A stretch of 64,000 bases of DNA. Source: Lama glama (Eukaryota). Where the stretch lies: the NCBI GenBank assembly GCA_028534125.1, contig CM052849.1, positions 20,646,001 to 20,710,000 on the forward strand. Reading direction: 5' to 3'. A model generated the notes under the pieces. That model was not told the DNA's origin, did not search any database, and saw only the letters and a list, made by a program, of their open reading frames with translations. Shown here piece by piece: positions 9,464 through 28,520 of this stretch; the stretch's first letter is position 1; each line of letters starts with the position of its first letter. Position numbers and translations under genes: made by a program.

Positions 9464-10819
9464 GTAGGTGGGCCCCCGCGAGCACGCTGCGGCCAGAGTC
9501 GCGAGCGGGGCTCCCCCGGGCCATCGGGACACCCACCCCCCAGGGCTCCGCGGGCTGCGTGGGCCCCGCGGGTCTTCCGGGTTGCTCTTGAAGGACCCTG
9601 GAGCCTGCGGTTGGTGCAGGGATGTTTGTGTCTTGAGGCTGTGACTTAAAAATCTCTAAATTGCACTGTCCGCAATGGGTCTGTCTAGCTACTCAGTCGG
9701 CCTTTTTTTCAGTTGTGTTTCTGTTGCCAAGATATCACTCTGTTTAGTTCGGGATGTGCTAGGGAGGTGGACACTGCTGGACTTGGAGGTGAAGGTGATA
9801 AAATGGATACTTAGAGGATTCTTCCTGTTCCTCTCCTCCCGTCTGAGGTCTCTGTTCAGATGGGGAGAGGGACGGTCATATTTTAGCTCCCTCTCTGGGA
9901 CCACTGTTTGCTGCGTGGTTAATAGGATGCCAAAAAAATACTGCTTGTCTGGTTGACTTGACATGGACTGTATTTGTTGAGCAAATACTTCCCTTCTTGC
10001 CTGAACCCAAGTGAGTGGAGAAGGAAATGAATGCTGTCAGAGGTGGCAAGTGGACTGGTTGGGTAGCTGCTGTCTCCTAGAACTGGCAGGCCTCAGAACC
10101 CTGTGAGCCTCAGCCAGCCAGCCTACCCCTCCACCCTCCAGGGGCCCCATGCAGCACTTACTTTGGGGGACCAGCATCTGCTGGGTTTGGGGTCCCAGGG
10201 ACTGCTCAGTTAGCAGCTCCCCTTCCCTTTCCCTGGGGCTTGGAGGCCAGCGACCTAGGATTCCCCAGTCTCAGAGGCTGAGCTCTAGGAGAGGGGAAGT
10301 CCCCATACTGCAGATCCCTGCAGTGAGCTCTCTCCAGGGGGCGGGGGTGCCTGGTCTGTAGAGAGCCTCAGGGTCAGGCGCTTGCAGCCAGGGGGAGGTG
10401 GCCCAGGGACAGGTTTGCTGCTTTCTGTCTGGGCACATGGGTGCACAGGGGTGGGGCACCTGCGTCCGAGCTTGTGCTAACACACAGCTCCAGGATCCTC
10501 TGTTGTGCACATCTAGAAAGCCTGAGATGGCTCCTGGGCCGAGGGATCCTCAGCTGACGCGCTTTGGTGGCGTATGGGGGCACCTGCCTTGGCTCTTTAT
10601 TGGGGAGGGGTGGCCCCAGGGCCGAGTTTTCCACCTTTGTACAAGCCAGGTCTTGCCCTGCAGCCTCTAAGAGTGGATACACCACCTGCCTTCCAGATGT
10701 AACCACTCTGTCAGGTGGAGGGAAAAAGAACCCTAACTGCAGCCTCCAAGGTTCTATGCTCCATCAGCTGCTCTGACAGCTGGACTCTGGCACCAGCCCG
10801 TCAGCCTCTTTCAGGTTAT

Positions 10820-11125
10820 GCCTCAGGGCCTCCGTACTTGCTGTTCCTCTGCCTTGGTCACTTGGTACCTTCCTGTCTCAGCACGGATGTCTCTCAGAGA
10901 GCCTCTCTGGCCTGACACAGCATCCCTTTCCCCCCACAGGTCCTTCTCCCCATGTTATTTTATATACTTTCTTTCCTGTCAGTTCCCATTCTCTCCCATG
11001 CTGTCTTGTAATTTGCTCACTCAAAACAGGTGCTCTCCCCACCAGAACTAGTAGCTCTGGCATCTTGTCTGTGTGTGTGCCCTGTGGGGTCCTAGTGCCC
11101 CAGACATGGTTGTGGAGTGAACTAG
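10820..11125 (+). mobile_element. L2 LINE fragment
   Basis: 'cctcagggcctccgtacttgctgttcctctgcc' and 'ctcagagagcctctctg' resemble the L2 3' region. Confidence 0.55.
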
Positions 11126-14100
11126 TGAGAGGAGAAACCGAAGTTCAGGGCGGCTGCGCCCAAGGTCACTCACAGGCCCTGGTGAAATGAGCCTGGTCCA
11201 CTCACTGCCTGCAGTGGCTCTGGCTGTACCTCTCCTGCATCAGGGGACACAAAATACAGCTTTGGGTTTAGGGGACTTCTGCAGGCTCAGACCAGACGAG
11301 ACTGAGCCTCCCTTCTGCTTGGCATTCACACAGACGCATCACCCTGGGGCTGCTCCGTGTGCCTTTCTCTGCCCTTCTGAGCCAGGGAGAGGGCTGCTGC
11401 CTTGGAAAGTACGGGGCTTCTGGGCAAGTCATGACTTCTAGATCGGCCTGCTTGTTTGGCCTCATTTCTTGCTGAAGTGTAGTGGTTTTCCCCCAGAGCT
11501 CAGATAACTCACGATGGCTAGCATGCAGCGATCGAGGACTTGGCCAGCGCTGTTTGGAGCCTGCTTGTCCCCACTGCACAGATAGGGACTCTGAGGCCCA
11601 GCGCCGTGAGTGTCATGGCTTTGGCCTGCCCAGTCTCAGATCTCTGCCAGGCCCTCAGGAGTCTGTCTTGGCCTCCATGTGGACATAAGCTGCCACCCTG
11701 GGAGCATAAACAACCAAATGTCAAGTGTAGACCCGCTCAGGAGGTGGGACCCATGCAGAGTGCCAGTGTCCCTCAAGTCCTCCTTTGTCCTGATGTGGTC
11801 CTCCCCACCCCCCACATCCCAGTAGGCCCCCCGCCCTCTATGCCCTGGGAAGGCCTCCTCCCACCCTGTTCCCCAGGCAGACCTCCCACCCACCAGGTCC
11901 CAGGCAGGTGCCAGACTCCCCCACTCTCAGCCCCATGTACTGCTGCTTTTCTGTGTCTGCCCCTGAGGGACAATGAGACAGATCCCTGCCTCTGGGGCAG
12001 CTGGGAGGGTCACCGGCCACTTCTGTTAAGTGCTGTGGGCAGAGCAGGCACTCTGTAATGTGGTGGCGATATTGTCAGCTGAGAAAGAGCCCCTAGGTGT
12101 GGCCTGACTCAGGATGTGTCAACAGGTCTGGGGATAGAGTTGTCTCCATTGGAGCCCTGGGTTGTACGGCTGGAGTCCAGTGTCTGAGCTGAGGGTGTGC
12201 AGAGGCCACAGTCTGGGCACGGGGTCACACCCCTGAACCCTGTCCCACATCAGCTTTCTGATTCTCCATTAATCAGGGTAGGGGCCGTGAGCAGGTAGCA
12301 GTGGGATGGGGTCTTGTGTTGGGGCTCTATTTTCTGTTCTCAGGGACATTTGGCATGGACCAATGGACAACTCTTGCTGTCTCTCTGGTTCCTGTGACAT
12401 CTCTGCCTCCTGATGTGTTGACCAGAGGTGATGGAGAGGCCCTTGGGGGACAGGCCAGAGCAGCGCTGTGGTTCTCTACCTAGATCTGCCCTTCTTCCCT
12501 ATGACAAAAGCCGCTCTTGGACTGCAGGGCAGGTTGTGCAGGCCCCTGGGTGTCCCAGGAGATCCACCTTGCAGGCAGAATTAGGACGGGCCTGGCAGAC
12601 CTACGTGTGCCTCTTGGTTGCCCTCGGGGTTGGCTGCACAATGCTCCGGCCCTTGCTCCTCAGTGCTCTGTCTGTGCAGGTCTAGAGGGTTTGCCACTAG
12701 CACCCAGTGGAAACCACCCTTCTGGTTTGGCATCCGTATGATTCCTTGTTGGTTTGCTTTTCAAACAGTAAAACACTTTTACCTGGTTCAGAGGAATCAA
12801 GCTCTATGGAAAAGCGTATTTTGGAAGAAGTCGGCTCCAAACTAGCCTCCTTCAGTAACTACTCTCACCAGCTCTTGGTGAGCATGTTTCCGGGGCATGT
12901 TACACAGCTGTCACCATACCGACTTGCAGTCTCTCCTTTTTTGTTGAAGGCAAAGATCATTCACCACATCTGTACCCATGTCTGGGAGGTGTGTACCCAG
13001 GAACAGAGATGGAAAGGAAAACACCCCAAGTTTTAGCTGTGGTCACAGGTGACTTCCTTTCTCTAATTCTGCTTCCTACTTTCTGATCAACATATGTTAA
13101 CTTCTATAGCCCACAAAACGTACACCTGAAGCCACATGTGAACGACTCACTGAGAAACCCTGCTCCTCCCCCCACACACCACATCAGCAGGTGGGTGGGT
13201 GGTCCTGGTCTGGCCGCCCAGCTCCCAGCCTTCAGGGCTGTCCAGGGCTGCCCAGCGGCTTGCATTGCATTTCTGCTGAAAATAACGGAGCTCTTCCCAG
13301 CTTGGGATATGCGCCTCAAACCCGCTGACTGCAGCTGAGGGGCGGGTTTAGCTCTGGACATGGTCCCATGGTGGATGGGGTGGTCTGTGAAGGGAGCCAA
13401 GACTCCCCCGACCCTGGGTCACATCCAGTAGGCTCAGGACTGGTGGCGTCTCTGCAGGCAGGATTCCGCATCCTTCAGGAGTAGGGAGCACGTGATCTGT
13501 GCTGGCTCTGGGTGCTCAGGGCCCGGAGTGTGGGGACCTGGGTGTAGCTCCACTGGCCCATGGATAGAAGGAAGCTCATGCTGTCGGTTTGTCTGGGGGT
13601 CCACGTACACAGCCCAACCCCCTGACAGAGGGAGAACAGGGCTGAGACCACGCACATGACTAGGCTGGGTGAGGAGAAGCCTCCAGGCCACAGCACCTCC
13701 TCCAGGCTACCTTCTGCTCTTCACATGGGGAACCTGAGCCCCAGAGAAAGAGAGTGCAGGCACAGGCTGGCAGTGTGGTACTGAGACTGGAAACTGCCTA
13801 GGACAGTGTTAGGCTGCTCCATCTTGCCCCACAAAGGCCCACAGCTTGGGGTGGGGGGCACTGCTCCCTCCAGAGGGGACCCTTCCAGCCAGTGATTGGA
13901 AAGCCATCGCACAGCCCCCTTGGTCCACGTGAGCATCTGCCACCCTAAGGCAGCAGGAGATTTGCTACTTGCAGGGTGGGGGGGCTCTGGGCGCAGCCTG
14001 CCCCCGCACTGCTACTGTCTCCTATTGTGGGTTAGCGCCTCGTTGTCCGGGAGCCAAGCACTGTGGGCACAGCGGTGACAACAGCTGCTCAGGGCATGTC

Positions 14101-14941
14101 TGGAGGACTCCCCGTCCTCACACGTCCACCTTGTAGACGAGGAAACCGAGGCCCTGGGTGGTGAAGTCCTTGCCCGAGATCTGCCCACCTCAGTACCAGT
14201 CTGCACCTGGACTTGGGCTGCATTTTTCGGATGCTCTTTGTGGAGAATCAGAGCTTGAGCAAGGGTGGTTCTGTGCAACATCTGAAGGGGTAGCCTTTTC
14301 CTGGGCTGTAGGAGCGATGTTGTGGCCCTGGGCCGGCTGCCTGACCTCTGGGGAAGGGCCATCTCTGAACACTGCGGGTATAGACGTCAGTCTGCAGAGC
14401 CTGCAGCTGCACGCGGGCTGGGAGGGGTCCGCCGCGTCACCCACAATCCCCACAGGCTCCTCATGGGAGGAAGGGCCCAGGCGAACACAGCAGTGGAGGC
14501 AGCCTCAGTCCTGGTGGGCAGTGCCTATCTTTGCTGGCCAGCTCATCACCCTCACCCACCCTTGAGCACAGGTGAGGGCCTTGAGCCCCATGTAGGGGGC
14601 GGGGCCATCTCCTGGGCTCCCCCAAGGCTGCACAGCACTGTGGCGTCTGGGCCTGTTTGTGTCCTGCCCATACTGTGCCCTGGCCCCTGTGAAGGCCTGT
14701 GGGGCTAAGGACAGTGAGGGTGGCAAACCGTCTGTCTCCCCACTTTCACCTCCACTGAGCACCTGGAGGCTGTGCTGTGCTTGAGGGGAGCCAGGGGAGG
14801 TGTAGCAGCATGGTCCCCGTCTTCCCACAAGTTGAATTTGCCCAGGAGGGGCAGCGTGGGCTGTGGGGGCACCCCTGTAGCATGCGGCAGCCCATCTTCC
14901 CTCTGCCCCTGCTGAGTTTCTGGGCAGAGTTGGGGTCCGCA

Positions 14942-14967
14942 GTGTGTGTGTGTGTGTGCGCGCGCGC
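14942..14967. repeat. (GT)n(GC)n alternating purine-pyrimidine microsatellite
   Basis: gtgtgtgtgtgtgtgtgcgcgcgcgc read directly. Confidence 0.9.
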
Positions 14968-16714
14968 TGTGGGGGTGGAGGGGTGGGTCCGCGTCCCAGA
15001 TACTTGTATGCGTGTGTGCACACACGGGCGTCTGTCTGGTGGGGCTGTGCCTGGTACATGTGTGAAGCCCCACGCGTGTCCATGCGCCCAGGACCTATCT
15101 GGGTCCAGGTAGTGAGTCAGGGAACCATGGGACCAGCGGGCTGGAAGCCGGGTCAGCCGGCCCCCCCAGAGCAGGGCTGCCTGGGACGGGAGGTGCTGAG
15201 AGGGGCACCTGTGTGCTGGCAGGTGTTAAGGCTCTGGGCGCCGTCCCATCACATTCTGTGCCGGTGGGCAGTGGTCGACTTCTGGAGAAAGGATGCTGGA
15301 GTCCAGCAGCCACTCCCACCGTGGGCACGGGGATCACTGTGAGCTGGGGGCAGCTAGGGTGACAACAATGGCACACAGTGACTGAGCGAGACACCTGCTG
15401 GGAGCCACCACCGTCCTGGCCCTGACCCGTTTGGCTCACGTGCAGTGTGCGGAGCCCCAGGAGGTGGGGGTCAGTCAGCCGTCTGCCGACGGACAGACCC
15501 GGGTGTGGGCCTCTGCTGCTCGCCTAGGGCAGGGTTACAGGTCTGGGCCGAGCCCACGCTGCCCAGGCCGTGTTGCCTGCTCCACCTCCTCTGCTGAGAG
15601 CCCCTTCCTGCCCATCTTCGGTGACTGGCGTGCGTGCTGGCCCGAGGACATGTCCCCAGGTGCAGTCTTCACAGGGCCTCCGGGCAGCTGGGCCACCTCC
15701 CAGTCAGGTTTTCAACACCAGGGGTTGCATAACAGCCGTGGCCTCCCTCCTCCAGCCAGGGCTGTTGCTAGGGAGGGTCTCTTAGCTCTCACACCTCGGG
15801 GCTTAGGCAGCAGTAGCCCCAGGGCAGGCCACGCCAGGCTCGAGTGGGGCCGCTGGCCGGCAGGGAGGCTCTGACCCATGCTCCCTCCCTGACTCCCTGA
15901 GCGGTGCTGAGCACAGCTGTGTCCCTGGCCTCTGCCAGCTGCGGGCTTTGCTCCAGGCAAAGGAGGCAGACAGTAACTAGACGGGCCGGAGACTGAGAGG
16001 AGACAACTGGCAGGTTCTGGGGAGGGGCCGGGGCCAGGTGGGGCTTTCAGGTTGAGATGTCTGGGGAAGGTCAGTGAGGCCACTGGCGGAGGGGCGGCTG
16101 GGTAGGGGCGTTGGGTGTCACTGAGGTCACCTGAGGCACTTTCTCTGTTGGGAGCTGGAATCTGAAACCTCCATGCAGTCAAGTGCTCTGGGGACTCGGG
16201 GCAGATGTGTTTGGCCCCAGTTTGGAGTGGAGAACCTCCCAGTGCCCTGGTTTGCCCCAGTAGTTCTGGGAAGAAAACTCACCCGAGTTCCCCACATCAT
16301 GCAGCTCACCAGGACTCTGCGTGCACACGGAGGGAGGGCTGATTGGGCCCCTGACGCCAGCCCGGCTGTTAGTACGCGCATGTCGTAGGGGTGACGCAGG
16401 GGGCTGTGAGTGTGTCTACATGGGGAGGGACTGCCCGCCTCTACTTCTTCCTGGGAGCAGCCATTCGGGATGGTCACTGCCTTCTGGACTCTGCACAGGC
16501 CGCAGGCATGGAGTTGCACACACTGACCCGGCTACAGGTGCCTGTGGGCCCCAGACAAGGGAGGGTTCTCTGGTAAGAGCCTAGTGTCAGCAGGCGTGGC
16601 GGGGAGCATCCTTGTGAGGCACAGGTGTGGCCTTGTCAGGGGGCCGCCACCCACACACGTGATCTGCGTAGATGCTGAAAGTCATGGGAAGCAGGAACGA
16701 TGGCAGTCAGAGTC

Positions 16715-16855
16715 TCCACTTGCTTCATCCTCCTAGCAGCCCCTGCAGCAGGTGCTTGCTGTCCCCATCGTGTAGACGAGAGAACTAAGGCATGGGGGTT
16801 AAGTCACATGGCTGGCAAGTAGCAGAGCAGGATTGGAACCCAGAGCAGGTCTGGG
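16715..16855 (-). mobile_element. MIR SINE
   Basis: 'tcatcctcctagcagccc...ccccatcgtgtagacgagagaactaagg...ggttaagtcacatggct...gcagagcaggattggaaccca' matches the MIR reverse complement. Confidence 0.7.
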
Positions 16856-19800
16856 GCGGGGGTCTTTGCTGCGCCTTGAGGGGTTGCGGATTGGAGGCCA
16901 TGCGACCTGAGAGCAGCAGGGCTCCTGCCCGTCCAGCGTGGGCTTCACCGCTCTAGTCTAGGGCCCATGTGTGGCCGCTCTGCCTTTCTGTCCTTGGAAG
17001 GGGCCTCACAGTTTCACACTGCGTCAGGAGTTGGCCCCATGGACCCTGATCCTTGCTGGGCTGGCAGGTTCCTAGTGGGACATCCAGACCAGCTCCCATG
17101 GGAGCCCCGGCCCACTGATCACCCCCAACCTGACATGTTGTGCCATGTGGGGTGCCTGGCAGCTGCTGCCCTCCCTGCAGATACACTCTCCAGCCTTGGA
17201 TTGTGGGGTGTTCATGCTCATGTGACCCCAAGACTCCTGCCTCAGGAAGAGCCAGAGTCCCCACAGGAACCCTTGGGAGCCGGCCATGGCCTTGTCACTT
17301 ACCTGACGTCACACATCACAGCTGTCCCTCCGACCCCAGCCCCACGTGCTGGTCTTCAGACCCTGGCAGGGCCCTGGCCAGTGCTTTTCCCACGTCCTGC
17401 ATGGCCTGCCCTCAGCCCCAGTGAGGATTTGTCAGACAGAAGCACGCCTAGACTCGTCTGCTGGGTAACACCAGGGGCCCCTGGCCCCTGAGATCACATC
17501 TCTGCCTGGCCCAGATCCCCCAAGGGTCCCCTTTCTGTCATCTGTGGAAGAACTCGTGTTGCCCTGGAGACCTGGCCCAGCCCATCTCCTCACCTCAGGC
17601 CCCGCCCCTGGACCACCTGCCTCGGGCCTCTGCCCCTGGCTCTTGCCGTCTCCCAGGCCCTCCCGGCCAGCTGAGGCGGCCAGTGAGGCTAGAGAGCGTC
17701 TCCTCCTCCTCACACGTGGCCCCAGGTTGCCCTGTCCTGCTCTGGGACTGTTTCCTCATCCAGGGGGTGACGAGATGCAAGTGCCTGCTGGGCTGCCTCA
17801 CGTCCTCCCGTCTCCTCTCTGAGGCCCTCCTCTGAGCTGACCCTGTAGTTTGTTTCTCTTTGTCCCCCACCCCGGACAGAAGGCAGGCACGAGATGCTTC
17901 GGCGGTGGCTGCTCTGGCTCCTGGCCTGCCTAGGCTGCTCCCCCTCCCGAGGTGGGCCAGGCGGGCTGGCTGGCAGCAGCTGTGCAGGTTCGGGGCACGG
18001 AGGGGGAGCTCCCGGGGAGCGAGCCTGAGACCTGCTTGGGCACTTGTGGGCGAGCACGGGATGCACCGTCTGGGTGTGCAGGGGCTGGCGGTCGGAGCCT
18101 CTGGGCTCGGTGCTCGGAGTCCTCCCCCGGTGTCACAGGCTAAGAGGGCCCTGGACAGAGACTGACTTCAGAACGTAATTGTCGGGACAGTGGTTGTGAA
18201 CATTAAGTCCCAGCTGAATGTTGATCAGAGGGCAGCTCAGTCAGCCACGGGGCAGGTCTGTCTTCTTTCCAGGTGACTCTTCGCTGTCGCAACAGCACAC
18301 AGCGGGGGCTCAGCGGACTTGTGAAGGAGTGGCTGTCTTCACAGGGCCCGGGAGGGGGCTTAACCCCGGGAGGGGCCTCCCTGCCTGCGGACTGGGGGCC
18401 CAGCGCTCAGGAAGCAGCCGCAGTGCTGACAGAGGCTGCAGGCATCCTGCTGGGGCTGCCCTGTGGCTGCCCGCCTGACTCCTGGGTCTTAGACCATCTG
18501 CCCTCCAGCCATGCTGGCCTCACCAGGTGTTGGGTGCCCAGAGCGCACTGTGGGCAGGGACTCAGGGACAGGGTACTGAGGACAAGTGCAGTGAGCCAAC
18601 AGAGGACTGACCCAGAGGGGCCAGGATACAACAAGCAGGGTCCAGAAGCTTTTGGAGCGGCTGAGGTCAGTGAGGCCTTCAGGAGACCATCCTTGGAGGC
18701 AGTGTGACACTTTAGCGGCCATGGTGGACGGTGCTGGGCCAGGGAATGAGGGGCCTCTCAGGTGGGGATGCCTCACCTGGGAGTTGGCAGACTGGCAGTG
18801 GGGTTGGGGAGAAGGTGGGGAGCAGTGCCTGTGTGGTGTGAGTATGAACTTAGGAGGGAGACGGGACAGGGAGGACAGTCCTGTCCCAACAGTGTAGCTG
18901 GAGGGGGCGACTGGACCTGGGCCCCATACCAGGGTGGAGGCAGCCCAGCCAGCTTCCAGTTCAGCGTTTGACCCGAGAGAGGTCAGAGGCAGGTATTGGA
19001 GGTGCCCCAGGATGGGGGTTGGGCCAGGCAGAGGGACCTTCCCACCCGCTCCATCCTGGCCTGCAGGACACTGTGGGCAGGGAAGGGCAGAGGCTGTCTG
19101 CTTGGAGGAAGGCACTGTTTGGGTGGTTCATGGGGCCTCCTTGGTTTCTCTGGGGCTTCCCCTGTTTTAGCACTGAAGCCCCACACCCCAGAAGCCCTCT
19201 CAGTCCCAGGCAGACAGGGAGACTTGGCCGCTTGAAGGTGGGGTCACCAGTTGCTGGTAGGCGGTGCAGAAGCCACTCTTTTTTGGCCAAGACGGAAGGG
19301 GAGGGGGTCCCTCTTGAGGAGTGACTCTGCGCTAAACCATGCGTTCCCCTGAACACAGGGAAGGACGTGTGGTCTGCCCCATGGTGCAAACCACAGCTGA
19401 GTAATCCAGGCGATGAGTGGGGAAGGTGGGGCAGGACTCTGGGTTGCGGGGAGGTTTGAGCCAAACTCGCAGGTGACGGGAAGTGAACCACGTGGCTGCC
19501 AGGGCAGAGGGCAGAGCCGAGCCGAGCCCCAGGCAGACGTGTTCTGAAGGGTGTCCAGGCTGGGGGGTGACAGGCTGCCAGGCGAGCTGTGAGGGAGGCT
19601 CTGAAGGTAGAAGGGGTGGGGCCGCACTCCGACTAGACGTGGGTAGGGTTCAGCCTGCACTTCTGGAGCCATGGAGAGCTGGTGCCGAGCCGCAGATCCC
19701 GGAGGGCTGCTGGGGCCCTCAGGTCCAGGAGCTTCTGAGACACAGGCTACCGCAGCTGCCCACAGCCTTCTGGCGCCTCACTGGGAGGGAGCTGTCATCC

Positions 19801-20682
19801 ACCAGGACCTCCCTCCCACACAGGGCGGGAGGTTGAGGGGCAGGTGGGGCCAAGGGCTGTGGTGAGGGCTCAGGTGGGTGGTCCCCTGGGGCCAGGCTTT
19901 CCTCTCCTCCTGATGGGGCCAGTGACAGGGTTGCCCGTGTTTGGTGACAAGAGGTGGGCTCTATGGGGCTGGGGCCCAGGTATCAGGAAGCAGGCCCCAG
20001 TGTGCTTCCTGGAGCAGGGGGGCTCCCACCTGGCTGGAGGGGTATGGCCATGCCTTTGCCTACAGGGCCTGGGGGCCTGGAGGAGCCTGGTCCGTGTGGG
20101 GACAAGGAGCCTCAGCCCCCAGTGAGGGGAATCATTCCTAATCTGTGTGTGTCAGCTATAGTTACTTTTCTCTCTCCCCGGTCAGTTCACTGATGCAGTT
20201 AGAGACTTCATTGGTGCTGTATAGTAATAATGTTTAGGAGAGCTGAAAGTAGTCATGTAAAATCACTACAGGAAAATCTAACCTGTGATTTCACAACAGC
20301 TCGCACCCCGCCCCAGTGGTCCAGGGAGGGTTCAAGGGCTTGGCCACTGCCAGGGGTGCTGGGGGCTTCACTGTGGGGTGACTGCCTCAGGCTACGAGGG
20401 GTTGTGCACTGCTATGCTTGGCAGTGCCTGCTCTGTAGGTTCCCTGCACGCGGGCATGGGCACATCTGCCCGTGTCTGTGTGCTCACAGGTGTGCACTGA
20501 CCCAGGTGGGTTGCACAGGTAGGTCTGTGCGGGGGAGGGGTTGGCTCAGGCTCTGCTGACTGAGGCCCTGCCTGGACCCCTCTTCAGGTCTCCTCACTTG
20601 GAGGCAGACACTCTGGTGACAGCAGGAGCTGGCCACCCCCGGGGCTGGCTAGAGGGTCTGGGGTGCCAGTAGACATGACCCT

Positions 20683-20718
20683 AGACCCCAGACCCCAGAC
20701 CCCAGACCGACCCCAGAC
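20683..20718. repeat. Short 7-mer tandem repeat (AGACCCC)n
   Basis: agaccccagaccccagaccccagaccgaccccagac. Confidence 0.8.
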
Positions 20719-23700
20719 TGCTGGAGTGCCTCCCGGCTCACCCTGAATCATTGTAGCCTCGGCAGTGCCTTGGTTTCCCCATTTGTACAGTGGAACACTT
20801 GTATCACCCAAATTGGTGGGCTCACCTCCACACACCGCAGCCTCGCTCCTCCCTGTGGGTCTCCCCATAGGCTCTCTGATCTGTAGCTCTGATTTCAACT
20901 TCTGGGCACAGCACTCCCTGGGGCCCTTGGTGTGGCGGTCGTTGTTGGGCTCAGCATCACTGGGAGCCTCACCCCAGCCTGGGCGCAGCTGCAGCCCCAG
21001 TCTACAGATGAGGCAACTGAGGCTGGGCAGGGCCAGCACTCCCAGCACAGGCTCAGTGGGGGCAGAACTGTGGCACTGCGTGTGCCCGAGCGCAGGTGAG
21101 CCTCCAGAAAGGGCCCAGACACACCCTGCAGGAGTGGCATCATGGGCGGAGGGCAGCTCGTGCTCCCCAGCTGTGTGCTGTGGAACAGGTGCCTGCCCCT
21201 GTGACCGCGGGCCCGTGGGACAGACGCACAGGATCTGTGCCCTGAAGCCCAGGGACCTTGGGTCATGCTCAGGGCAGTGGCTCAGTGGGAGCCGCTGCTC
21301 CTGGACCCTGTGCGCCCTGCTGTGGAGAGGTCCTGTTGAGATGGTGGTTTTCCTTCCAGGAGAGGGAACTGGCGGGGCCGTCGGCTTAGTTCATCCTCTC
21401 CAACCTTCAGGCAGGATGTGCACTGCAGGAGGCCCCTGCCCGGGAAAGCCGGGAGGAGAGAGCCTGTGGTCTCGCTGTCCCCTCGGTCTGCACAAGGCCC
21501 ACGCCTGCTGCACACTGGCTCACCCTTGGCCTGGCCAGCGCCGGCAGCTTTCCCGCTCCCCTCCTTCTAGGTGCAGGAGTTCCTTCCCTGGGCCCTACCT
21601 GACACCATGGGCTGTGGCCAGGATGGAGCTGGACTGAGTCCAGGCTGGGGAAGAGGCCCAGGCACTGATGGTTCAAGGATTCTGACAGCCTAGTTGTTAA
21701 ACACCAGAATGTTGGACACGGGTCTACAGAAAATATGATGAACTAGAACAATTTGTGGTTGACAAGTGCGTCCTTTTTGCCACGTGAACAGCACAGTGGC
21801 TGGATGTGTCTGGAGAGATAGCCTGGAGTTTTCCTGAGGCCTTTCTAGAACCTGTGGAGGGGCAGAGGTGGGCCCTGTGCAGCCCCCACCACAAAAGTCA
21901 CCAGGCCTGCTTTGCTGCGCGTCTGCCCCTTTGTCGTCTTTGCTCACAGATGCTTGTAAGAAAGACAGATCCCAGCCCAGCCAAGTGTCCCCGTGTTTCA
22001 TAGTCAGTAGTGGAAATGGTAACACGTTCCGTGTGTTTGCTCAGACTTCTAATCAGACACACCACAGACAGCCCTGTTCCCTTTCCAGGGCTCAGACATG
22101 AGAGCTCCAAGATCATCCCCCAGGCTAGAAGCGGTTTCTGTGACATTAGCCAGGTAGGTAAGAAGTGGCCTCGGACAGCCTAGGAAGGCCCTGAGTGGCT
22201 CCTTCGCACAGAGTGAGTGGCTCCCCTGCAAAAGTGGGGCTAAGCCACAGTGACTCGGGACGTGTGTGTCACTGGGTCAGGTCACCCAGTGGCAGCATGC
22301 TTACTTTTTCCAGAAGGAAGTGGGAAGCTGGGGAGAGCTAATTGGCCGCCTTCTGTGGCAGTTGGAAGGTCAGAGAGGCCCAGGGGGCCTGTCAGGTCAG
22401 GGCTCTGGGGGCCTCACTGCTCCCGGGGGCCTGTGTGAGAACAGCCTGTGAGCAATGAGATCCTCGCAGGCTGGGTGACCAGGAATAGCGCTGGACATCT
22501 CGGGCCCTTGGACTCTGTCTCTGAGGGGGGACAGCACTTGTGTCGGGGGGGCACCAGCAGTCAGTAGTTATTAAGTACCCTGCGGTGGGGAGTCAGTTCC
22601 TGTCTTCACCAGTACTTTGTCGCTGGAGGGACAGCATCCATTTTCTTCCCCAGGGAGGCCTGTGCCGTATGCTCGGCCAGCTGCTGACCGATGGAGCCTC
22701 CCTCTAGCATCCCTGTCCCTGGGAGATGGGCACCAGAGGGAGAGTGGAGCTCCTCGCCGCCTCAGAGACTTTGCACCAGCTGCTCCCAGTGGGAGGCTCC
22801 CCAGGCTCTGACCGAGGGTCCTCCCCACGCTCTCTGAAGCGGCTCCTTCCCTTCTGCTTCCTCCCTATGTTACCTTCCCACCTGTTTGTGTGTTGTGACA
22901 ACTTGCCTTTTGGGCAGGCTCCCTCCTGAGCTAGTTATAGCTACCTGGAGGCGAGCTTGCACACGGTTGGCGCTCGCTGCCAGTTAAAGGGAATGACCTG
23001 ATGCCCGTGAACAGGGCAGGCGCTGGGAAGTCCTGGGGTCAGCGGGGGCTCCGTCGTCAGGGCACGAGGGGAGAGTGGTCCCCTCGGGCTGAGATGAGCT
23101 GGTGCTCTGAGAGGATCGGGGTTGGTGAGGACATCTGACCAGGGCTCTAGAGGAGGCCACAGAAACGCAGGTGGCCTGGGGTGTCCCTCCAGTCTGATAG
23201 CTCACAGTGGCTATCCTGCGACTGGGAAGTTGCTCAGGCAGAAGCCTGTGGAACTTTGGGCAGACCCACGTGTGTGGGCCAGGCAGGTCATCAGCTGGGA
23301 CCCGAGTTCCAGGCTGGTAGGGCCGCTTCCGATAGGGAGTGCTTCTGACCTCATAGACTTTCCAGAACAAGCACCGTGCTTGTGGCCTCATGGCTCAGCT
23401 GACTTTTAGGAGCCCCCAACCCTACTGGCACACCAACCCTTAGTGTGGGGTCAGAGGTCAAAGGCTGCTGTATGCCCCCTCTTGAGAGGCTCTGGAGGGC
23501 CTGTCCCTCCTCAGATCCTGCAGTGAGCCCCGGATCTGTGTGACCATGGCTTTGGGCCCCTCCTTGGGCAGTCAGTCCGGGAGACGGAAGGAACCTCCTG
23601 CCGCCATGGGCAGCCACAAGCCTACCGTGCCCATGACTGCTCCCAGACCAGGCTGCTGGTCACACGTGGCGGGGCAGTCGTGGGAGCTTTCACACCGAGG

Positions 23701-24803
23701 GGCACTTCCTGTGGGACCATGGGGCTGTCACTGAGGGGCATTTCCTGTGCGGCCGTGAGGGTGGCACCTGGAATGTGGGGTAGCACCTGGGATATGTCAC
23801 CACTGCCCTCATTTAGGCTGGCCTCCCCACCTCCTTGGGCAAATGCTTTCAGAATCTTGTGGGTCGCTTGTTGGTATTCCCTTACCTCTCTGTTCAGCAG
23901 CCCAGTGTAGCTGGGAGGGGTGCCACCTCACCTGCTCACCAGCAGAAAATACCAGGCCCTCTTGGGCTCTGGGCACATTGGTGGGGCTGCAGATGGGCGT
24001 GGGTCCAGGACCACCTCTGCATAGTAGGAGCCGTGCAAGTGCGCAGGCCTGGCTGGGGGCAGGGGAGACCACGCTCCGTTGTCGGTATCAGTGTAGCACG
24101 TGCTTACTGAACACCCGCCGTGTCTCAGGCCCTGCTCGAGGCACTGGGTGCAGCCATGCAGGCAGGCACAGGTCCCTGTTCTAGGGACGAGAGCTGGCTG
24201 AGATGGGGCCTGCTTTCCCAAGACAGGCTTCCGTGGCATCAGGATGCCCTGCTGCGTGGAGCTGGGCTGCTGAGTAAGCCCTTGGGTGGCTCAGGACCAG
24301 GGGATGGGCGACTGGAGCTGCAGCGTGTCTGCCTGTGGCCGGCTACTGTGGTGGTGGCCCTCTGCCCAGGAATCCAAGGGGCACCCCCCAGGAAGAGCCT
24401 TCCCTCACTGAGGCTAGCACAGCTGCCAGTCTCAGCACCTGCTTCCTGCTGAGCTTGGGCGAGGCCTCACGCTGGGCCCAGATCAGGGCCCTCCATTACC
24501 GGCTGGGAAACTCACTCCCCCTCCCCAGACCCCCAGTCCTGACAGGCCCACACATATCTGACCCATCTGCCCCCTACCCATCCGTCCATCTCCTTTCATC
24601 CTCCCTCAGATGGAGCCCCCCCAGGGTGGGAGGCTCCTTCCCAAGGTATGAGTGTCAGCTTGCGAGCCCACTCAGGGCAGGGTAGGGCGGGGCCGGCACC
24701 TCCAGGTGGGTGCTGCCACTGCCCAGGTCCCCGCTCAGCACCACAGTCTCACACGGTGTCCCTGGTGGGGTGACACGTGGAGTCGTGGGTCGCTGCCGAT
24801 TAA

Positions 24804-25175
<372 letters not shown>

Positions 25176-25894
25176 TAGGGGGCACACGTGGACTGGGGCC
25201 CAGGGCAGCCGCCCGCTGGAAGTCCGGGTCCTGAGCAGAGGCAGGAGACCTGCCCCAGGTGGGTCACAGCCAGGGAGAGGCCAACCCGGGCCAGGAACCC
25301 AGGGGTTGGGGGTAGGGGTGCTCAGCTGAGGCGGGGCGGGAGGATGCGCTTGCTGATAGGCTGGCCCCGTTTCCCCACTGCGTCTGTCAGGCTCCGCCGA
25401 CTGCAGGGTGGCCAGCGTGTCTGTAATGCGTGGGGACCGGGCTCATTGCTAAGTGCTCTCCATCTGCTAAACTTAAGTGAAATGCAGTGTGTCTGCGAGA
25501 CGGGGAGGGAGTCATGTCACTTGCGGTTGGTGGTCCAGGTGCAAGGAGCAGCCCTGCCCCGGGGCCTTCCTCTGCAGCTGCTGGGGGTGCGCCCTCAGGG
25601 GGAGGGGCTGTCCTTGCTGGGACGGGGCTGGGAGACGGGTCAGGGGCTCTCTCCCCGAGCGCAGGGTTCTGTCCTAGGTGTCGGCTCGGCACTGCAGCTG
25701 CTCTCCTCTTCAGGGACTCACTGGTTTGCGCCTTCTTTTCAGAGATGGGTTTTCTTGGTGTTTCACACTCCACTTTCAACTCCCTTGGGGATTGGAAGGC
25801 TGGTGAGGGGGCAGCATGTCTCAGGGACCTGGGCTGGATGGGGGGTCTGCAGGCACACCTGCCCAGGTGGACACGTGCTCTTTCTTCCATGCAG

Positions 25895-27226
25895 GTGTGC
25901 TCCCCAGAAGGGGGGCCGCTCCCAGCCAACCACTGGGACCAGAACAGCCCGGCCCAGCACCAGCAGCAGCTCCAGCCCAGCCAGCCCCAGGGGTCACTCC
26001 CAGCCCCGTGTCAGCGCTGCCAGCCCTGTGGGGCTCTCCCGGACCCTGGGCAGCCCTGCCAGCCCCAGCGGCCACTCTCGGGTCAGCGCAGCTGGCCCCA
26101 GCGGTCACTTCCAGGCCCAAGACGGCCCTGCCAGCCCCGGCGGTCACTTCTGGGCCCAGGTCAGCCATGCCGGCCCCAGCAGCTGCTTCCAGCCCCAGAT
26201 CAGCACTGCCGGCCCCAGCGGTCACTCCTGGCTCAGCCCCACCAGCCACGTTGGGCACTGCTAGCCCCCAGGCAGCGCTGCCGGCGCCTGCGCTCCCTCC
26301 TGGCCCCGTGGCAGCGCTGCCGGCCCCTGCGGTCCATCCTGGCCCCCTGTCACCTCTGTCGGCCCCTGCGGTCTATCCTGGCCCCATGGCACCGCTGCCG
26401 GCCCCTGCGGTCCATCCTGGCCCCGTGCCACCTCTGTCGGTCCCTGCTGGCCCTCTGGCACCGCTACTGGCCCACGCGATCGTGGATGGCCCCACGTCTC
26501 CGCAGCCAGCCCAGCAGGGCATCCTCGGGGCAGCGGTACCGGCCCCTTCGGTCACTGCTAGCCCAGTGCCAGCGGTGCCAGCCCCCACAGTCACTCCTCA
26601 TGCTGCGTCCACGTCGCCGGCCCACCAGCTCACTCTCAGGCCAGTGCTGCTGCCCCCGGCGAGCATCCCTAGCCCTGGGCCAACCCCGAAGGTCCCTCCT
26701 GGGCCAGCCCAGCCGCCCTCGGCGGTCGCTGCTGGGCCTCAGTCAGCCCCAGCAATTAGTTGAAGCCCCAGAGCAGCCTGGCCCCACCAAGTCTTCGCTG
26801 CTGGGCCCCGGACAGCCGTGCCAACAAAAGCGGCCACTCATGGACCCAGAACAGCCTCACCCACCCAAGCGGCCACTCCTGGGCCCAGAGCAGCCGTGCC
26901 GACGAAAGCGGCCACTTATGGGCCCGAAACAGCCCTGCCAGCCCCTGCGGTCACTTCTTGGCCCAAGCCAGCCCTGCAAGCCCCAGCCATTACTCCCCAT
27001 ACCCGAGCGCCCGTCACTCCTGGGCCGGCCAGCCCCACCCCGCAGGCCTCTCCTGGGGCCCCCAAGCCCGCCACGGCAGTCCCTGCTGGACCTGGTTCGG
27101 GCCCATCAGCCCCAGCTCTCACTCTTGGCCCTGGGCCAACCCTGCCGGCCCCTGAGGTCACGACGGACTCGATCCTCTGCCCCTGCAGTGGCCCGCCAGG
27201 CCCCGTCTGTGAGCCCCGGAGCCTGA
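25895..27226 (+). CDS. FBRSL1: FBRSL1 alternative terminal exon (short N-terminal isoform), 443 aa repeat-rich tail
   Basis: Acceptor ctctttcttccatgcag|GTG is in phase 0 with exon 2. 1332-nt open frame starting VCSPEGGPLPANHWDQNS. Repeat-unit indels preserve the frame and substitutions between units fall at third positions. A poly(A) signal lies downstream. Confidence 0.8.
   Translation: MCSPEGGPLPANHWDQNSPAQHQQQLQPSQPQGSLPAPCQRCQPCGALPDPGQPCQPQRPLSGQRSWPQRSLPGPRRPCQPRRSLLGPGQPCRPQQLLPAPDQHCRPQRSLLAQPHQPRWALLAPRQRCRRLRSLLAPWQRCRPLRSILAPCHLCRPLRSILAPWHRCRPLRSILAPCHLCRSLLALWHRYWPTRSWMAPRLRSQPSRASSGQRYRPLRSLLAQCQRCQPPQSLLMLRPRRRPTSSLSGQCCCPRRASLALGQPRRSLLGQPSRPRRSLLGLSQPQQLVEAPEQPGPTKSSLLGPGQPCQQKRPLMDPEQPHPPKRPLLGPEQPCRRKRPLMGPKQPCQPLRSLLGPSQPCKPQPLLPIPERPSLLGRPAPPRRPLLGPPSPPRQSLLDLVRAHQPQLSLLALGQPCRPLRSRRTRSSAPAVARQAPSVSPGA
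26006..27170 (+). repeat. Degenerate coding minisatellite, ~32 units of 39 nt (variants 33/30/24 nt)
   Basis: Recurrent 'cagccctgccagccccagcggtcactcctgggccc'-like unit. Peptide consensus is roughly P-x-Q-P-C-x-P-x-R-S-L-L-(G/A). Confidence 0.88.
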
Positions 27227-28459
27227 CACCCATTTTTGCAGACCACCGCAGGTGTGGCTGTGCAGGGCGGGGCCGAGGCCCCTCACCCTGCCACCTGAGA
27301 TGCGCTGTCAGACTGGCCGGAGGCCTTCTCCAAGCAGGCCGGGCTGTTGGCAGTTGGAAGCTGAGGCTCAGCAGAGGCAGGAGCCCCCTGCAGGGCTGCC
27401 ACCAAGCTGAGGCCTGCCCACGCCAGGAAGAGAGGAGAGGACCCGCAGCGGCTTCCCACCTCCCCGCCACGGCACCCCCCCCCCCGTGCCCACTGCTTTG
27501 TGACGCGCATGCCCCGGGGAGAGGGGACACAGCCACCCCCTGAGGCTCAGACTTGGGGGGGCCCTCAGCATCTCTCTGTGCCTCTGAGGTGCCCACGTAC
27601 ACCTGTCCCAGCTGCGCTGAGTGCGAGTTTTTGTGTGAACGTATGTGGCATGTGGTCTGGAGTGTGTGCGTGTACGTTGGAGGGGAGCCTTGCCCTCCTT
27701 GGGCCCTGCTCAGTCCCCCACCGGCAGGATGTAGGCACAGCTGGAGCGGGGCCTCAGGTCCCGCTTACCTTCCCTCAGGCAGAGGGTGATGTGTGTCCAC
27801 CTCCAGGGCCCTGTGGCGGGGGAGGGGGCGTGAGGGGCGCTTAGGGCCGTCTGTGGTTGAGTCTGAACTGCTGGTGACGAGGAGGGTCTCCCTCAGGACT
27901 CTGCCTCCACCCCAGAGGCTGAGCGCTGAAGTGGGGGGCAGAGTCTCACGTCCCCCCTAGCTTTGGACCAAGAGAGCCTGCAGGACCCGAGGCCATTCTC
28001 AGAATGTCCCCTTCCTACAGCTTTCCCACTGCTGGCCCCCTAGGATGTCCCCTGTTGGGACACACCCCGCACTGCAGGGCTTTCTCTGCCCCACCCACCT
28101 CACACCTGTGCTCAAGGTCACCCATCCCTCGCCCCAGGCCTCTGACTCAGGGCAGCCCCACACCAGTGCTCCTGGAGCCCCGGGCACGTGGTGGGCAAGC
28201 AGCACCGGCCACAGGGGGCGCCCTGGCCAGGCTCCCAGTCAGCGCTTTGTGCGCCTAGTCTCACGGAGCCGTGACAGCCACCTCCGGTACCGGCCCGGTT
28301 CGTGGAGGCCACAGAGGGGCCCCTCTGTTTCTGGGTCCAGGCCTTCCTCCCTGGCCTCCCGGGGCCCTGACGAGCCAGACGTGGTGTCTGCCCCGTAGCC
28401 TGGCACCCAGAGCAGGGCCCCAAGGTCTCCCTCCCAGAAACGTGGGGCTTATTTTTCTG

Positions 28460-28520
28460 ATTAAAGGAAATAAAAAGTGCTGTGCCATTATTTTTATAAC
28501 AGCATCAGTGTTTGTAATTT
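28460..28520 (+). terminator. Candidate intronic poly(A) signal for the short isoform
   Basis: ATTAAA at 28460-28465 and AATAAA at 28469-28474, with a U-rich element upstream and 'tttttata'/'gtgtttgtaattt' downstream. Confidence 0.6.

What the first reader, a model, noticed from the sequence alone, without database searches (positions are those of the whole stretch)
25895..27226. Alternative terminal exon built from a 39-nt minisatellite encodes a basic Cys-periodic 13-aa repeat domain
Seen: 863 nt after exon 2, a good phase-0 acceptor opens a 443-codon frame of about 32 units (e.g. PGQPCQPQRPLSG, PWQRCRPLRSILA, PEQPCRRKRPLMG, PKQPCQPLRSLLG). Shortened units are 11, 10 or 8 aa, so the indels preserve the frame. 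The product is Arg/Pro/Gln/Leu rich and poor in acidic residues, with Cys recurring at one repeat position and four CxxC motifs (CQRC x2, CHLC x2). Splicing here gives a ~600-aa protein that lacks the C-terminal AUTS2 domain. Recalled: human FBRSL1 has short isoforms with a stop-containing alternative exon 3, hit by truncating variants in a malformation syndrome and given an FtsK-like domain label. The exon itself is therefore probably not new. Inference: I do not know of a description of its tandem-repeat architecture. It looks like an exonised VNTR forming a repeat module (possibly metal-binding, palmitoylated, nucleic-acid-binding or condensate-forming), and the FtsK label is likely a Pro/Gln low-complexity match.
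Basis: partly seen in the sequence, partly recalled or inferred. Interest (0 to 1): 0.75.

Follow-up and report, generated by a model that had tools for sequence, protein, structure and literature searches.

The report
Known FBRSL1 short-isoform exon, repeat-built
This is the counterpart of the already known alternative last exon of the FBRSL1 gene's short forms; it is built from about 32 worn copies of a 13-amino-acid unit and looks like a floppy, strongly positively charged tail rather than a DNA-pumping or metal-binding domain.

Summary
An AG acceptor at 25893-94 opens 443 codons (25895-27223, TGA at 27224-26). The frame has 39-nt/13-aa periodicity and parses into 32 units: 22 of 13 aa, 6 of 11, 2 of 10 and 2 of 8.

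The exon is not new. Nine annotated "fibrosin-1-like" short isoforms match it at E 1e-80 to 1e-134. They come from hedgehog, shrew, bat, four rodents and two monkeys, share the same exon-2/exon-3 junction and all end at the same aligned last column. Papers on human FBRSL1 validate the same stop-containing alternative exon 3 and show it is needed in frog rescue assays.

Two points may be new. I found no description of the repeat architecture. The published "FtsK DNA translocase domain" label also looks like an artefact. Pfam and NCBIfam give no match, and similarity to E. coli FtsK sits in its Pro/Gln-rich linker and vanishes under composition correction.

The repeat-position Cys is the least conserved unit position (0.47), and CxxC counts range from 0 to 5, which argues against metal binding. 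AlphaFold gives pLDDT 42. High positive charge and proline content are what is conserved.

No orthologous DNA was available for dN/dS.

The parts
25000..25033 (+). last codons of FBRSL1 exon 2 (ends 25031, phase 0) and GT donor at 25032-33
   Evidence: sequence. The orthologous proteins read ...KQ|VCSPEGG across this junction in 9 of 9 cases.
25877..25894 (+). pyrimidine tract and AG acceptor of the alternative exon 3
   Evidence: sequence. The exon-3-encoded part of 9 of 9 orthologues starts exactly at the residue encoded from 25895.
25895..26005 (+). non-repeat, Gln-rich lead of the exon (aa 1-37), well conserved
   Evidence: The 12-aa segments at aa 1-12 and aa 19-30 score identity 0.85 and 0.84 over the 9 orthologues.
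26006..27169 (+). array of 32 degenerate 39-nt / 13-aa units (22x13, 6x11, 2x10, 2x8 aa); consensus roughly P-x-Q-P/R-C-R/Q-P-x-R-S-L-L-G/A
   Evidence: TRF, autocorrelation, parse and per-position residues. The unit HMM gives 29 hits in the exon, all on the + strand, and only 6 chance-level hits (E 2.2-9.2) in the rest of the window.
26306..26461 (+). younger two-unit (78-nt) duplication inside the array
   Evidence: 65 of 78 bases are identical between the halves, and 53 of the first 57. It matches a 26-aa block absent from 7 of 9 orthologues. This is the TRF block with 85% matches.
27170..27226 (+). conserved C-terminal tail and TGA stop (27224-26)
   Evidence: The last 12 aa are the most conserved segment, identity 0.87. 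All 9 orthologues end at the same aligned column, and 5 of 9 are identical in the last nine residues.
27227..28474 (+). putative 3' UTR up to paired poly(A) signals (ATTAAA at 28460, AATAAA at 28469); inferred, not shown
   Evidence: Pattern scan.

Best explanation
Window 25895-27226 is the coding part of the alternative, stop-containing last exon ('alternative exon 3') of FBRSL1. It is spliced to exon 2 in phase 0 to make the short N-terminal isoforms that lack the AUTS2 domain. This identity is shown by homology.

The exon arose by tandem amplification of a 39-nt unit before the placental orders sampled here split. Since then it has mostly decayed in place, with a few local unit gains and losses.

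It encodes a 443-aa tail rich in Pro, Leu, Arg and Gln, with net charge +59 and pI 11.8. The tail is predicted to have no fixed fold.

Inferred mechanism: the tail works as a multivalent, charge-driven interaction region. About 30 reiterated short basic/Leu-Leu/Pro motifs would bind acidic partners such as nucleic acid or chromatin, tubulin tails or partner proteins. This would give the short isoform the activity that the long isoform lacks. The tail is not a DNA translocase domain, and the periodic Cys are not a conserved metal site.

My confidence is about 0.95 for the identity and architecture and about 0.45 for the mechanism.
For: Identity:
- 9 of 9 significant hits are fibrosin-1-like short isoforms, at E 5.7e-134 to 9.5e-80. 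The profile search returned the same 9.
- 9 of 9 share the Q|V(C/G)S.EGG junction and all end at the same aligned last column.

Frame keeping:
- There are 46 distinct gap blocks among 10 sequences. 40 of them are not multiples of 13 aa, yet the C-terminus is shared.

Age of the array:
- Orthologous identity is 0.67 in aligned cells, against a mean of 0.37 between units of the same protein.

Conserved properties:
- Net charge is +17 to +59, pI 10.0-12.0 and Pro 17-24% in all 10 sequences.
- Unit positions 7 (Pro, 0.82), 1 (Pro, 0.73) and 10 (Ser, 0.73) are the best kept.

No fold or known family:
- AlphaFold2 on a 9-row alignment gives mean pLDDT 42.1 and pTM 0.14, with one helix at 179-190.
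- Pfam gives 0 families at E<=10, NCBIfam 0 and PDB sequences 0.

Human papers (passages read):
- Isoforms 3.1 and 3.2 with this exon were validated by RT-PCR and western blot. N-terminal isoforms are seen in cytoplasm and nucleus and at centrosomes and kinetochores (PMC7519918).
- Isoform 3.1 rescues frog morphants. The long isoform, p.Q163* and the frameshift within exon 3 do not (PMC11128277; PMC12449339).
- Isoform 3.1 associates with YY1.

Transcription in this species:
- Five runs on record as RNA, from 2 studies, each hold 0.56 of the sampled words of 24700-27500. The part from 25895 onward makes up 0.57 of that stretch.
Against: - The 0.56 share is indirect.
- The open frame is partly compositional. 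A second + frame has a single stop, and frame 0 was open in 14 of 2000 shuffles.
- Only annotated proteins were compared, so species with a broken frame would not appear (ascertainment).
- No orthologous DNA was available, so dN/dS is unknown. Identity of 49-65% by BLASTP means constraint on the sequence is weak.
- Low pLDDT from a 9-row alignment does not prove disorder.
- Some Cys are well kept: aa 2, 55 and 79, the CCC at 251-253, and 178/181. A small local metal or disulfide site is not excluded.
- Nothing here tests binding.
Confidence: 0.7

Rival explanations
1. The tail has no sequence-specific role. The exon matters only because its stop cuts off the AUTS2 domain, and the frame stays open because a GC-rich 39-nt repeat has few stop triplets and slips in multiples of three.
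For: - The exon is 72% G+C.
- A second + frame has only 1 stop, and other ORFs of 315 and 241 aa overlap.
- BLASTP identity to orthologues is only 49-65%.
- Whole-unit indels occur: 6 of 46 gap blocks.
Against: - 40 of 46 gap blocks are not unit-sized, yet the frame and C-terminus are kept across four orders.
- The last 12 aa are the best-conserved segment, at 0.87.
- In the human papers a frameshift inside exon 3 and a stop at residue 163 abolish rescue, while the intact short isoform rescues (passages).
Confidence: 0.12
2. The periodic Cys and CxxC pairs form a metal-binding (zinc) or otherwise Cys-dependent repeat module, for example a palmitoylated one.
For: - There are 25 Cys, with Cys at unit position 5 in 15 of 22 full units, and five CxxC in the window.
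- Some Cys are well conserved: aa 55 in 8 of 9, aa 79 in 7 of 8, and aa 251-253 in 7-8 of 8.
Against: - Unit position 5 is the least conserved of the 13 positions (0.47).
- Cys are kept in 98 of 156 aligned cells (0.63), below the overall 0.67.
- CxxC counts are 0-4 in the 9 orthologues, and 0-2 in the four rodents and two monkeys.
- No fold was predicted and no Pfam zinc-finger family matched at E<=10.
Confidence: 0.06
3. The exon encodes a real FtsK-like DNA translocase domain, as labelled in the FBRSL1 papers from the NCBI CDD.
For: - The label is reported in PMC7519918, PMC8602103 and PMC11128277 (passages).
- BLASTP without composition correction aligns the exon to E. coli FtsK residues about 695-900 at E 8e-11. 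This is higher than any of 100 shuffles of the exon.
Against: - With composition correction the best E is 0.41 or 2.9.
- The uncorrected matches lie mainly in the Pro/Gln-rich linker; the top HSP runs to residue 900, into the alpha domain. Pfam places the alpha, motor and gamma domains at 840-1324.
- The exon matches no Pfam or NCBIfam family at E<=10, whereas FtsK itself matches four FtsK families.
- No ATPase-like fold was predicted.
Confidence: 0.01

Closest known systems
Human FBRSL1 isoforms 3.1 / 3.2 (NM_001382741.1, NM_001382742.1): alternative exon 3 with stop codon
   Same: It has the same gene position after exon 2, is the same stop-containing last exon, and gives short N-terminal isoforms without the AUTS2 domain. 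Monkey, rodent, bat, shrew and hedgehog versions align over the whole exon. The papers were read as passages.
   Different: The species differs. The window has 443 codons against 229-422 in the nine orthologues, including a two-unit block that 7 of 9 lack. I did not compare with human sequence itself. The papers call the region an FtsK domain and do not mention repeats.
AUTS2 N-terminal isoform with an alternate stop-containing exon 5 (described in PMC7732068, passages)
   Same: It is a paralogous gene that also makes a short N-terminal isoform through an alternative exon carrying a stop.
   Different: No sequence relation was seen. Both protein searches returned FBRSL1 proteins only, within the tool's length limits of 0.55-1.75x the query.
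Pro/Gln-rich linker of E. coli FtsK (residues about 200-820)
   Same: It is rich in Pro and Gln and low in complexity. This is the only part of FtsK that aligns, and only without composition correction.
   Different: The linker is acidic and Ala-rich (E 8.7%, A 13.4%, R 5.0%, C 0%). The exon is basic and Leu-rich (R 14.4%, L 15.1%, C 5.6%). There is no motor domain and no significant corrected similarity.
Coding minisatellites that yield repeat-built disordered protein regions (general class; recalled, not tested here)
   Same: Head-to-tail units whose length is a multiple of three are translated into a periodic low-complexity region, with some copy-number change between species.
   Different: Here the array is old and degenerate. 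Variation within a population was not tested.

Membership tests
FBRSL1 short-isoform alternative exon 3 (orthology) | Sequence similarity over the whole exon to annotated FBRSL1 short isoforms | tested here: met
   There are 9 hits, all named fibrosin-1-like or fibrosin like 1, at E 5.7e-134 to 9.5e-80. Seven of the 9 cover 99-100% of the query. The profile search gave the same 9.
FBRSL1 short-isoform alternative exon 3 (orthology) | Phase-0 junction to exon 2 at the same residue, with the in-frame stop at the same place | tested here: met
   The junction Q|V(C/G)S.EGG is present in 9 of 9. All 9 end at the aligned last column and 5 of 9 are identical in the last nine residues. The window has AG at 25893-94 and TGA at 27224-26.
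FBRSL1 short-isoform alternative exon 3 (orthology) | Spliced transcript 25031->25895 present in this species | tested here: inconclusive
The only indirect evidence is that 5 RNA runs from 2 studies each hold 0.56 of the sampled words.
FBRSL1 short-isoform alternative exon 3 (orthology) | Purifying selection on the frame and sequence (dN/dS below 1) | not testable with these tools
   No mammalian genome DNA collection is on hand. Only the protein-level frame keeping could be assessed.
FtsK/SpoIIIE DNA translocase | FtsK_SpoIIIE ATPase motor (with alpha and gamma domains) recognisable by profile | tested here: not met
   The exon matches 0 Pfam families at E<=10 and 0 NCBIfam families. As a positive control, E. 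coli FtsK matches PF01580, PF13491, PF17854 and PF09397.
FtsK/SpoIIIE DNA translocase | Significant composition-corrected similarity to a bona fide FtsK | tested here: not met
   The best corrected E is 2.9 or 0.41. The uncorrected hits lie mainly in the linker, at about 695-900.
Cys-based metal-binding repeat | Ligand Cys conserved across orthologues | tested here: not met
   Unit position 5 has identity 0.47, the lowest of the 13 positions. Cys are kept in 98 of 156 cells. CxxC counts are 0-5.
Cys-based metal-binding repeat | Compact fold or metal occupancy | tested here: inconclusive
   AlphaFold2 gives pLDDT 42.1 and no fold. Metal binding needs an experiment.
Coding minisatellite / VNTR | Head-to-tail units of 10-100 nt | tested here: met
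   Period 39 is shown by TRF, by lag 39 identity of 0.533 and by the 32-unit parse.
Coding minisatellite / VNTR | Copy number variable within a population | not testable with these tools
   No reads could be laid. Between species, 6 of 46 gap blocks are whole-unit multiples.
Intrinsically disordered basic region | Low-complexity composition, no predicted fold, and charge kept rather than sequence | tested here: met
   P+L+R+Q+S make up 70% of residues. pLDDT is 42.1. Net charge is +17 to +59 in 10 of 10 sequences. This is prediction only.

The most novel reading that the evidence does not exclude
The 13-aa units (P-x-Q-P-C-R-P-x-R-S-L-L-G) are an undescribed array of reiterated short linear motifs. 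The array's valency and positive charge would carry the short isoform's specific activity, such as association with chromatin/YY1 or with spindle, centrosome and kinetochore. Loss of this array, rather than of a 'DNA translocase domain', would then explain why truncations of the short isoform fail in the frog rescue assays. The array would be a placental-mammal innovation created by exonising a minisatellite in intron 2.
Probability: 0.3. Interest if true: 0.5.

Novelty: already known. Interest (0 to 1): 0.33.

Why it matters
The exon itself is known and disease-relevant in people. The value here is a correction and a description.

Several FBRSL1 papers explain the short isoform's function through a predicted 'FtsK DNA translocase domain'. 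In this orthologue that label reduces to a composition match with the FtsK linker.

Seeing the region as an ancient array of about 32 units of 13 aa, basic and probably disordered, changes which experiments make sense. Useful ones would be unit-deletion series, charge-preserving scrambles, Cys-to-Ser mutants, and binding tests for nucleic acid and microtubules.

It also gives a clear case of a minisatellite fixed as coding sequence across placental orders.

Tried and rejected
- **LxxLL nuclear-receptor boxes.** I considered them because of the recurring LRSLL. Only 3 strict LxxLL occur in the window and 1-5 in the orthologues, so I dropped the idea.
- **Protein Atlas look-alikes.** Recognition was 770 and the best score 0.83, to bacterial hypothetical proteins. 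This gives no lead.
- **PDB sequence search.** It gave 0 matches at E<=10.
- **Pfam and NCBIfam.** Each gave 0 families at E<=10.
- **Profile search for older or paralogous relatives.** It returned the same 9 proteins. In the two protein searches 7184 and 7223 candidates of unnamed source were left out, and only lengths of 0.55-1.75x the query are seen. A blank for marsupials, birds, frogs or AUTS2/FBRS therefore means little.
- **Exon 1.** tblastn used the exon-1-encoded parts of 2 of the 4 orthologues that carry one (P0004, 97 aa; P0001, 86 aa) against window 1-24800. There was no hit at E<=1e-3, so the ~600-aa product could not be assembled from this window.
- **Earlier findings of the scan.** There was nothing near the place.
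- **Other tandem arrays.** There were 0 rows at score >=80 in 27227-57000 and in 9500-24800.
- **Literature on the repeat.**
  - The word 'repeat' has 0 occurrences in PMC7519918, PMC12449339, PMC12690526 and PMC11128277.
  - In PMC8602103 the passages shown that hold 'repeat' concern AUTS2 repeats.
  - In PMC7732068, 12 of 16 places were shown and none concerns this exon.
  - 'FBRSL1' plus 'tandem repeat' gave 5 papers, none with FBRSL1 in title or abstract. I read passages of one (PMC10048024, a list of horse genes with frameshift indels, no location given).
  - The search with VNTR, minisatellite and internal repeats listed 10 of 749 papers, all with 0 FBRSL1 occurrences, so it was uninformative.
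  - Supplementary files were not seen. They may hold domain schemes or alignments that bear on whether the repeat has been described.
Full report
**Observation**

The sequence shows exon 2 ending at 25031 (…AAG CAG) with a GT donor at 25032-33. An 863-nt intron follows, then a pyrimidine tract and AG at 25877-25894. From 25895 the frame runs 443 codons to TGA at 27224-26.

The other two + frames carry 6 stops and 1 stop, and the three - frames carry 5 to 17. Dinucleotide-preserving shuffles of the exon give about 4 stops per frame. Frame 0 was open in 14 of 2000 shuffles, and any + frame in 0.036 of them. The open frame is therefore unusual. At 72% G+C, and with two other overlapping + ORFs of 315 and 241 aa, it is not strong evidence by itself.

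The periodicity is clear.
- TRF reports period-39 arrays at 25973-26228 (68% matches), 26264-26447 (85%) and 26802-26984 (74-75%), with higher-order periods of 78 and 111.
- The best nucleotide lag is 39 (identity 0.533), followed by 78.
- The best amino-acid lag is 13 (0.342), followed by 26.

A hand parse gives 32 units over aa 38-425: 22 of 13 aa, 6 of 11, 2 of 10 and 2 of 8. An HMM built from 13 seed units finds 26 units or fragments, so 'about 32' depends on the parse.

Composition is P 19.4, L 15.1, R 14.4, Q 11.7 and S 9.5%, with 11 acidic residues in 443 and 25 Cys. There are five CxxC rather than four. Cys occupies unit position 5 in 15 of 22 full units.

The 39-nt unit is confined to the exon. 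It gives 29 HMM hits there, all on the + strand. Elsewhere in the window there are 6 hits at chance level, E 2.2-9.2. No other tandem array scores 80 or more in the 45 kb examined around it.

**Identity**

The translated exon finds nine proteins, all named fibrosin-1-like or fibrosin like 1. They come from Erinaceus, Suncus, Pipistrellus, Microtus, Arvicanthis, Psammomys, Acomys, Rhinopithecus and Mandrillus. E-values are 5.7e-134 to 9.5e-80 and identities 49-65%. A profile built from the exon-3 parts returned the same nine and nothing else.

In all nine, the part that aligns to the window begins directly after a Gln, at V(C/G)S.EGG. This is the junction predicted for 25031|25895. All nine end at the same aligned last column, and five have the identical last nine residues. 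Four are 536-576 aa with an exon-1-encoded start. Five are 293-444 aa; four of them begin with Met within the exon-2-encoded part, and Rhinopithecus (415 aa) begins there without a Met.

Papers on the human gene were read as passages only.
[quoted passage not shown] These were validated by RT-PCR and western blot (PMC7519918). They are now NM_001382741.1 and NM_001382742.1 (PMC12449339).
- A frameshift variant lies inside this exon.
- Isoform 3.1 rescues frog morphants. The long isoform, p.Q163*, p.W111* and the exon-3 frameshift version do not (PMC11128277; PMC12449339).
- Isoform 3.1 associates with YY1.
- N-terminal isoforms are seen in cytoplasm and nucleus and at centrosomes and kinetochores.

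In three rodent orthologues the exon-3 part begins at residue 164. If human numbering matches, which I did not check, p.Q163* removes exactly this exon's product. That is inference.

The exon is therefore already known, coding, and functionally required in people.

**Evolution**

In aligned cells the orthologues are 0.67 identical to the window, whereas units within the window protein average 0.37. The units are thus older than the split of the orders sampled, and the array is mostly frozen rather than an actively turning-over VNTR.

There are exceptions. A two-unit (78-nt) duplication at 26306-26461 has 65 of 78 bases identical between its halves. It corresponds to a 26-aa block that 7 of 9 orthologues lack. 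Several other 13- or 26-aa gaps exist, so 6 of 46 gap blocks are unit multiples.

The other 40 gap blocks are not unit-sized, yet the frame and C-terminus are shared. This points to selection for the frame. Two caveats apply: only annotated proteins were seen, and some gaps are alignment artefacts.

No mammalian DNA collection was available, so dN/dS was not computed. From general knowledge of neutral divergence between these orders, the observed identity suggests constraint that is real but weak. This is inference.

**The FtsK label**

The exon matches no Pfam family and no NCBIfam family at E<=10. E. coli K-12 FtsK, used as a control, matches four FtsK families, with the alpha, motor and gamma domains at 840-1324.

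Composition-corrected BLASTP of the exon against FtsK gives a best E of 2.9 or 0.41. Without correction and without SEG, the exon aligns to FtsK residues about 695-900 at E 8e-11. That region is mainly the Pro/Gln-rich linker. The match is stronger than any of 100 residue shuffles of the exon (best 42.4 bits against 51.6). It therefore reflects local P/Q-rich patterning rather than overall composition alone.

I could not run CDD itself.

**Cys and structure**

Unit position 5, the Cys position, is the least conserved of the 13 (0.47). Positions 7, 1 and 10 are the best kept, at 0.82, 0.73 and 0.73. Cys are kept in 98 of 156 aligned cells (0.63), below the overall 0.67. They are replaced mostly by S, R, Q and Y.

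CxxC counts are 5 in the window and 0-4 in the orthologues. Some Cys are well kept: aa 2, 55 and 79, 178/181, and the CCC at 251-253.

AlphaFold2 on the 9-row alignment gives mean pLDDT 42.1 and pTM 0.14, with a single helix at 179-190. PDB sequences give nothing and the Atlas gives no lead.

What is conserved is character: net charge +17 to +59, pI 10.0-12.0 and Pro 17-24% in all ten sequences. Also conserved are the non-repeat lead, the segment LLPIPERPSLLG and the last 12 residues, at 0.81-0.87.

**Expression in this species**

Five runs on record as RNA, from two studies, each hold 0.56 of the sampled words of 24700-27500. DNA-like runs hold 0.84-0.91. The part from 25895 to 27500 is 0.57 of that stretch, so the share fits a transcript that holds the exon but not the intron. 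It shows no junction.

I worked beside that stretch afterwards.

Poly(A) signals at 28460 and 28469 suggest a 3' UTR of about 1.2 kb. This is inferred.

**Mechanism and verdict**

The best reading is that this is the orthologue of the known FBRSL1 alternative exon 3, built from an ancient 39-nt coding minisatellite. It encodes a very basic, proline-rich, probably disordered tail. I infer, but have not shown, that its reiterated motifs act as a multivalent, charge-driven binding region that gives the short isoform its specific activity.

The rivals are a tail without sequence-specific role, a Cys-based metal module and a true FtsK domain. Each is less likely for the reasons above.

The exon is already known. 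The repeat description and the demotion of the FtsK label appear not to be in the papers I could search (and the term counts). Supplements were not seen. Interest is modest.

Noticed in passing
window 25816-26763 and 26818-27543 (+): Two further long + strand ORFs (315 aa, Ala/Pro-rich; 241 aa) overlap the exon in other frames, and + frame 2 has a single stop across the exon. I read this as a composition effect of the C-rich repeat. No orthologue protein matches these frames.
   Followed up: partly
window 25895-27226: There is strong strand asymmetry: C 591 against G 365 (GC skew -0.24), with 78 runs of three or more C against 20 of G on the + strand. The template strand is therefore G-run rich and could form G-quadruplexes or R-loops.
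   Followed up: no
window 26306-26461: A two-unit (78-nt) duplication is younger than the rest of the array, with 65 of 78 bases identical. The matching 26-aa block is present in the hedgehog protein but absent from 7 of 9 orthologues. I did not resolve whether the gain was shared or independent.
   Followed up: partly
window 28460-28474: Paired poly(A) signals (ATTAAA and AATAAA, 9 nt apart) lie about 1.2 kb after the stop. They are the likely end of the terminal exon.
   Followed up: no
protein P0009 (Acomys), C-terminal end: A 25-aa in-frame insertion repeats the tail motif just before the shared C-terminus. This is a lineage-specific tail duplication.
   Followed up: no
protein P0008 (Mandrillus): It lacks about 200 aligned residues in the middle of the array (two gaps of 101 and 102 columns). 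This could be a real deletion or an assembly or annotation gap. I left it out of alignment A1.
   Followed up: no
runs X1-X5: The five RNA holders are labelled as reproductive-system metagenome or transcriptome. All five show the same word share (0.56), as if each holds the same transcript part.
   Followed up: no
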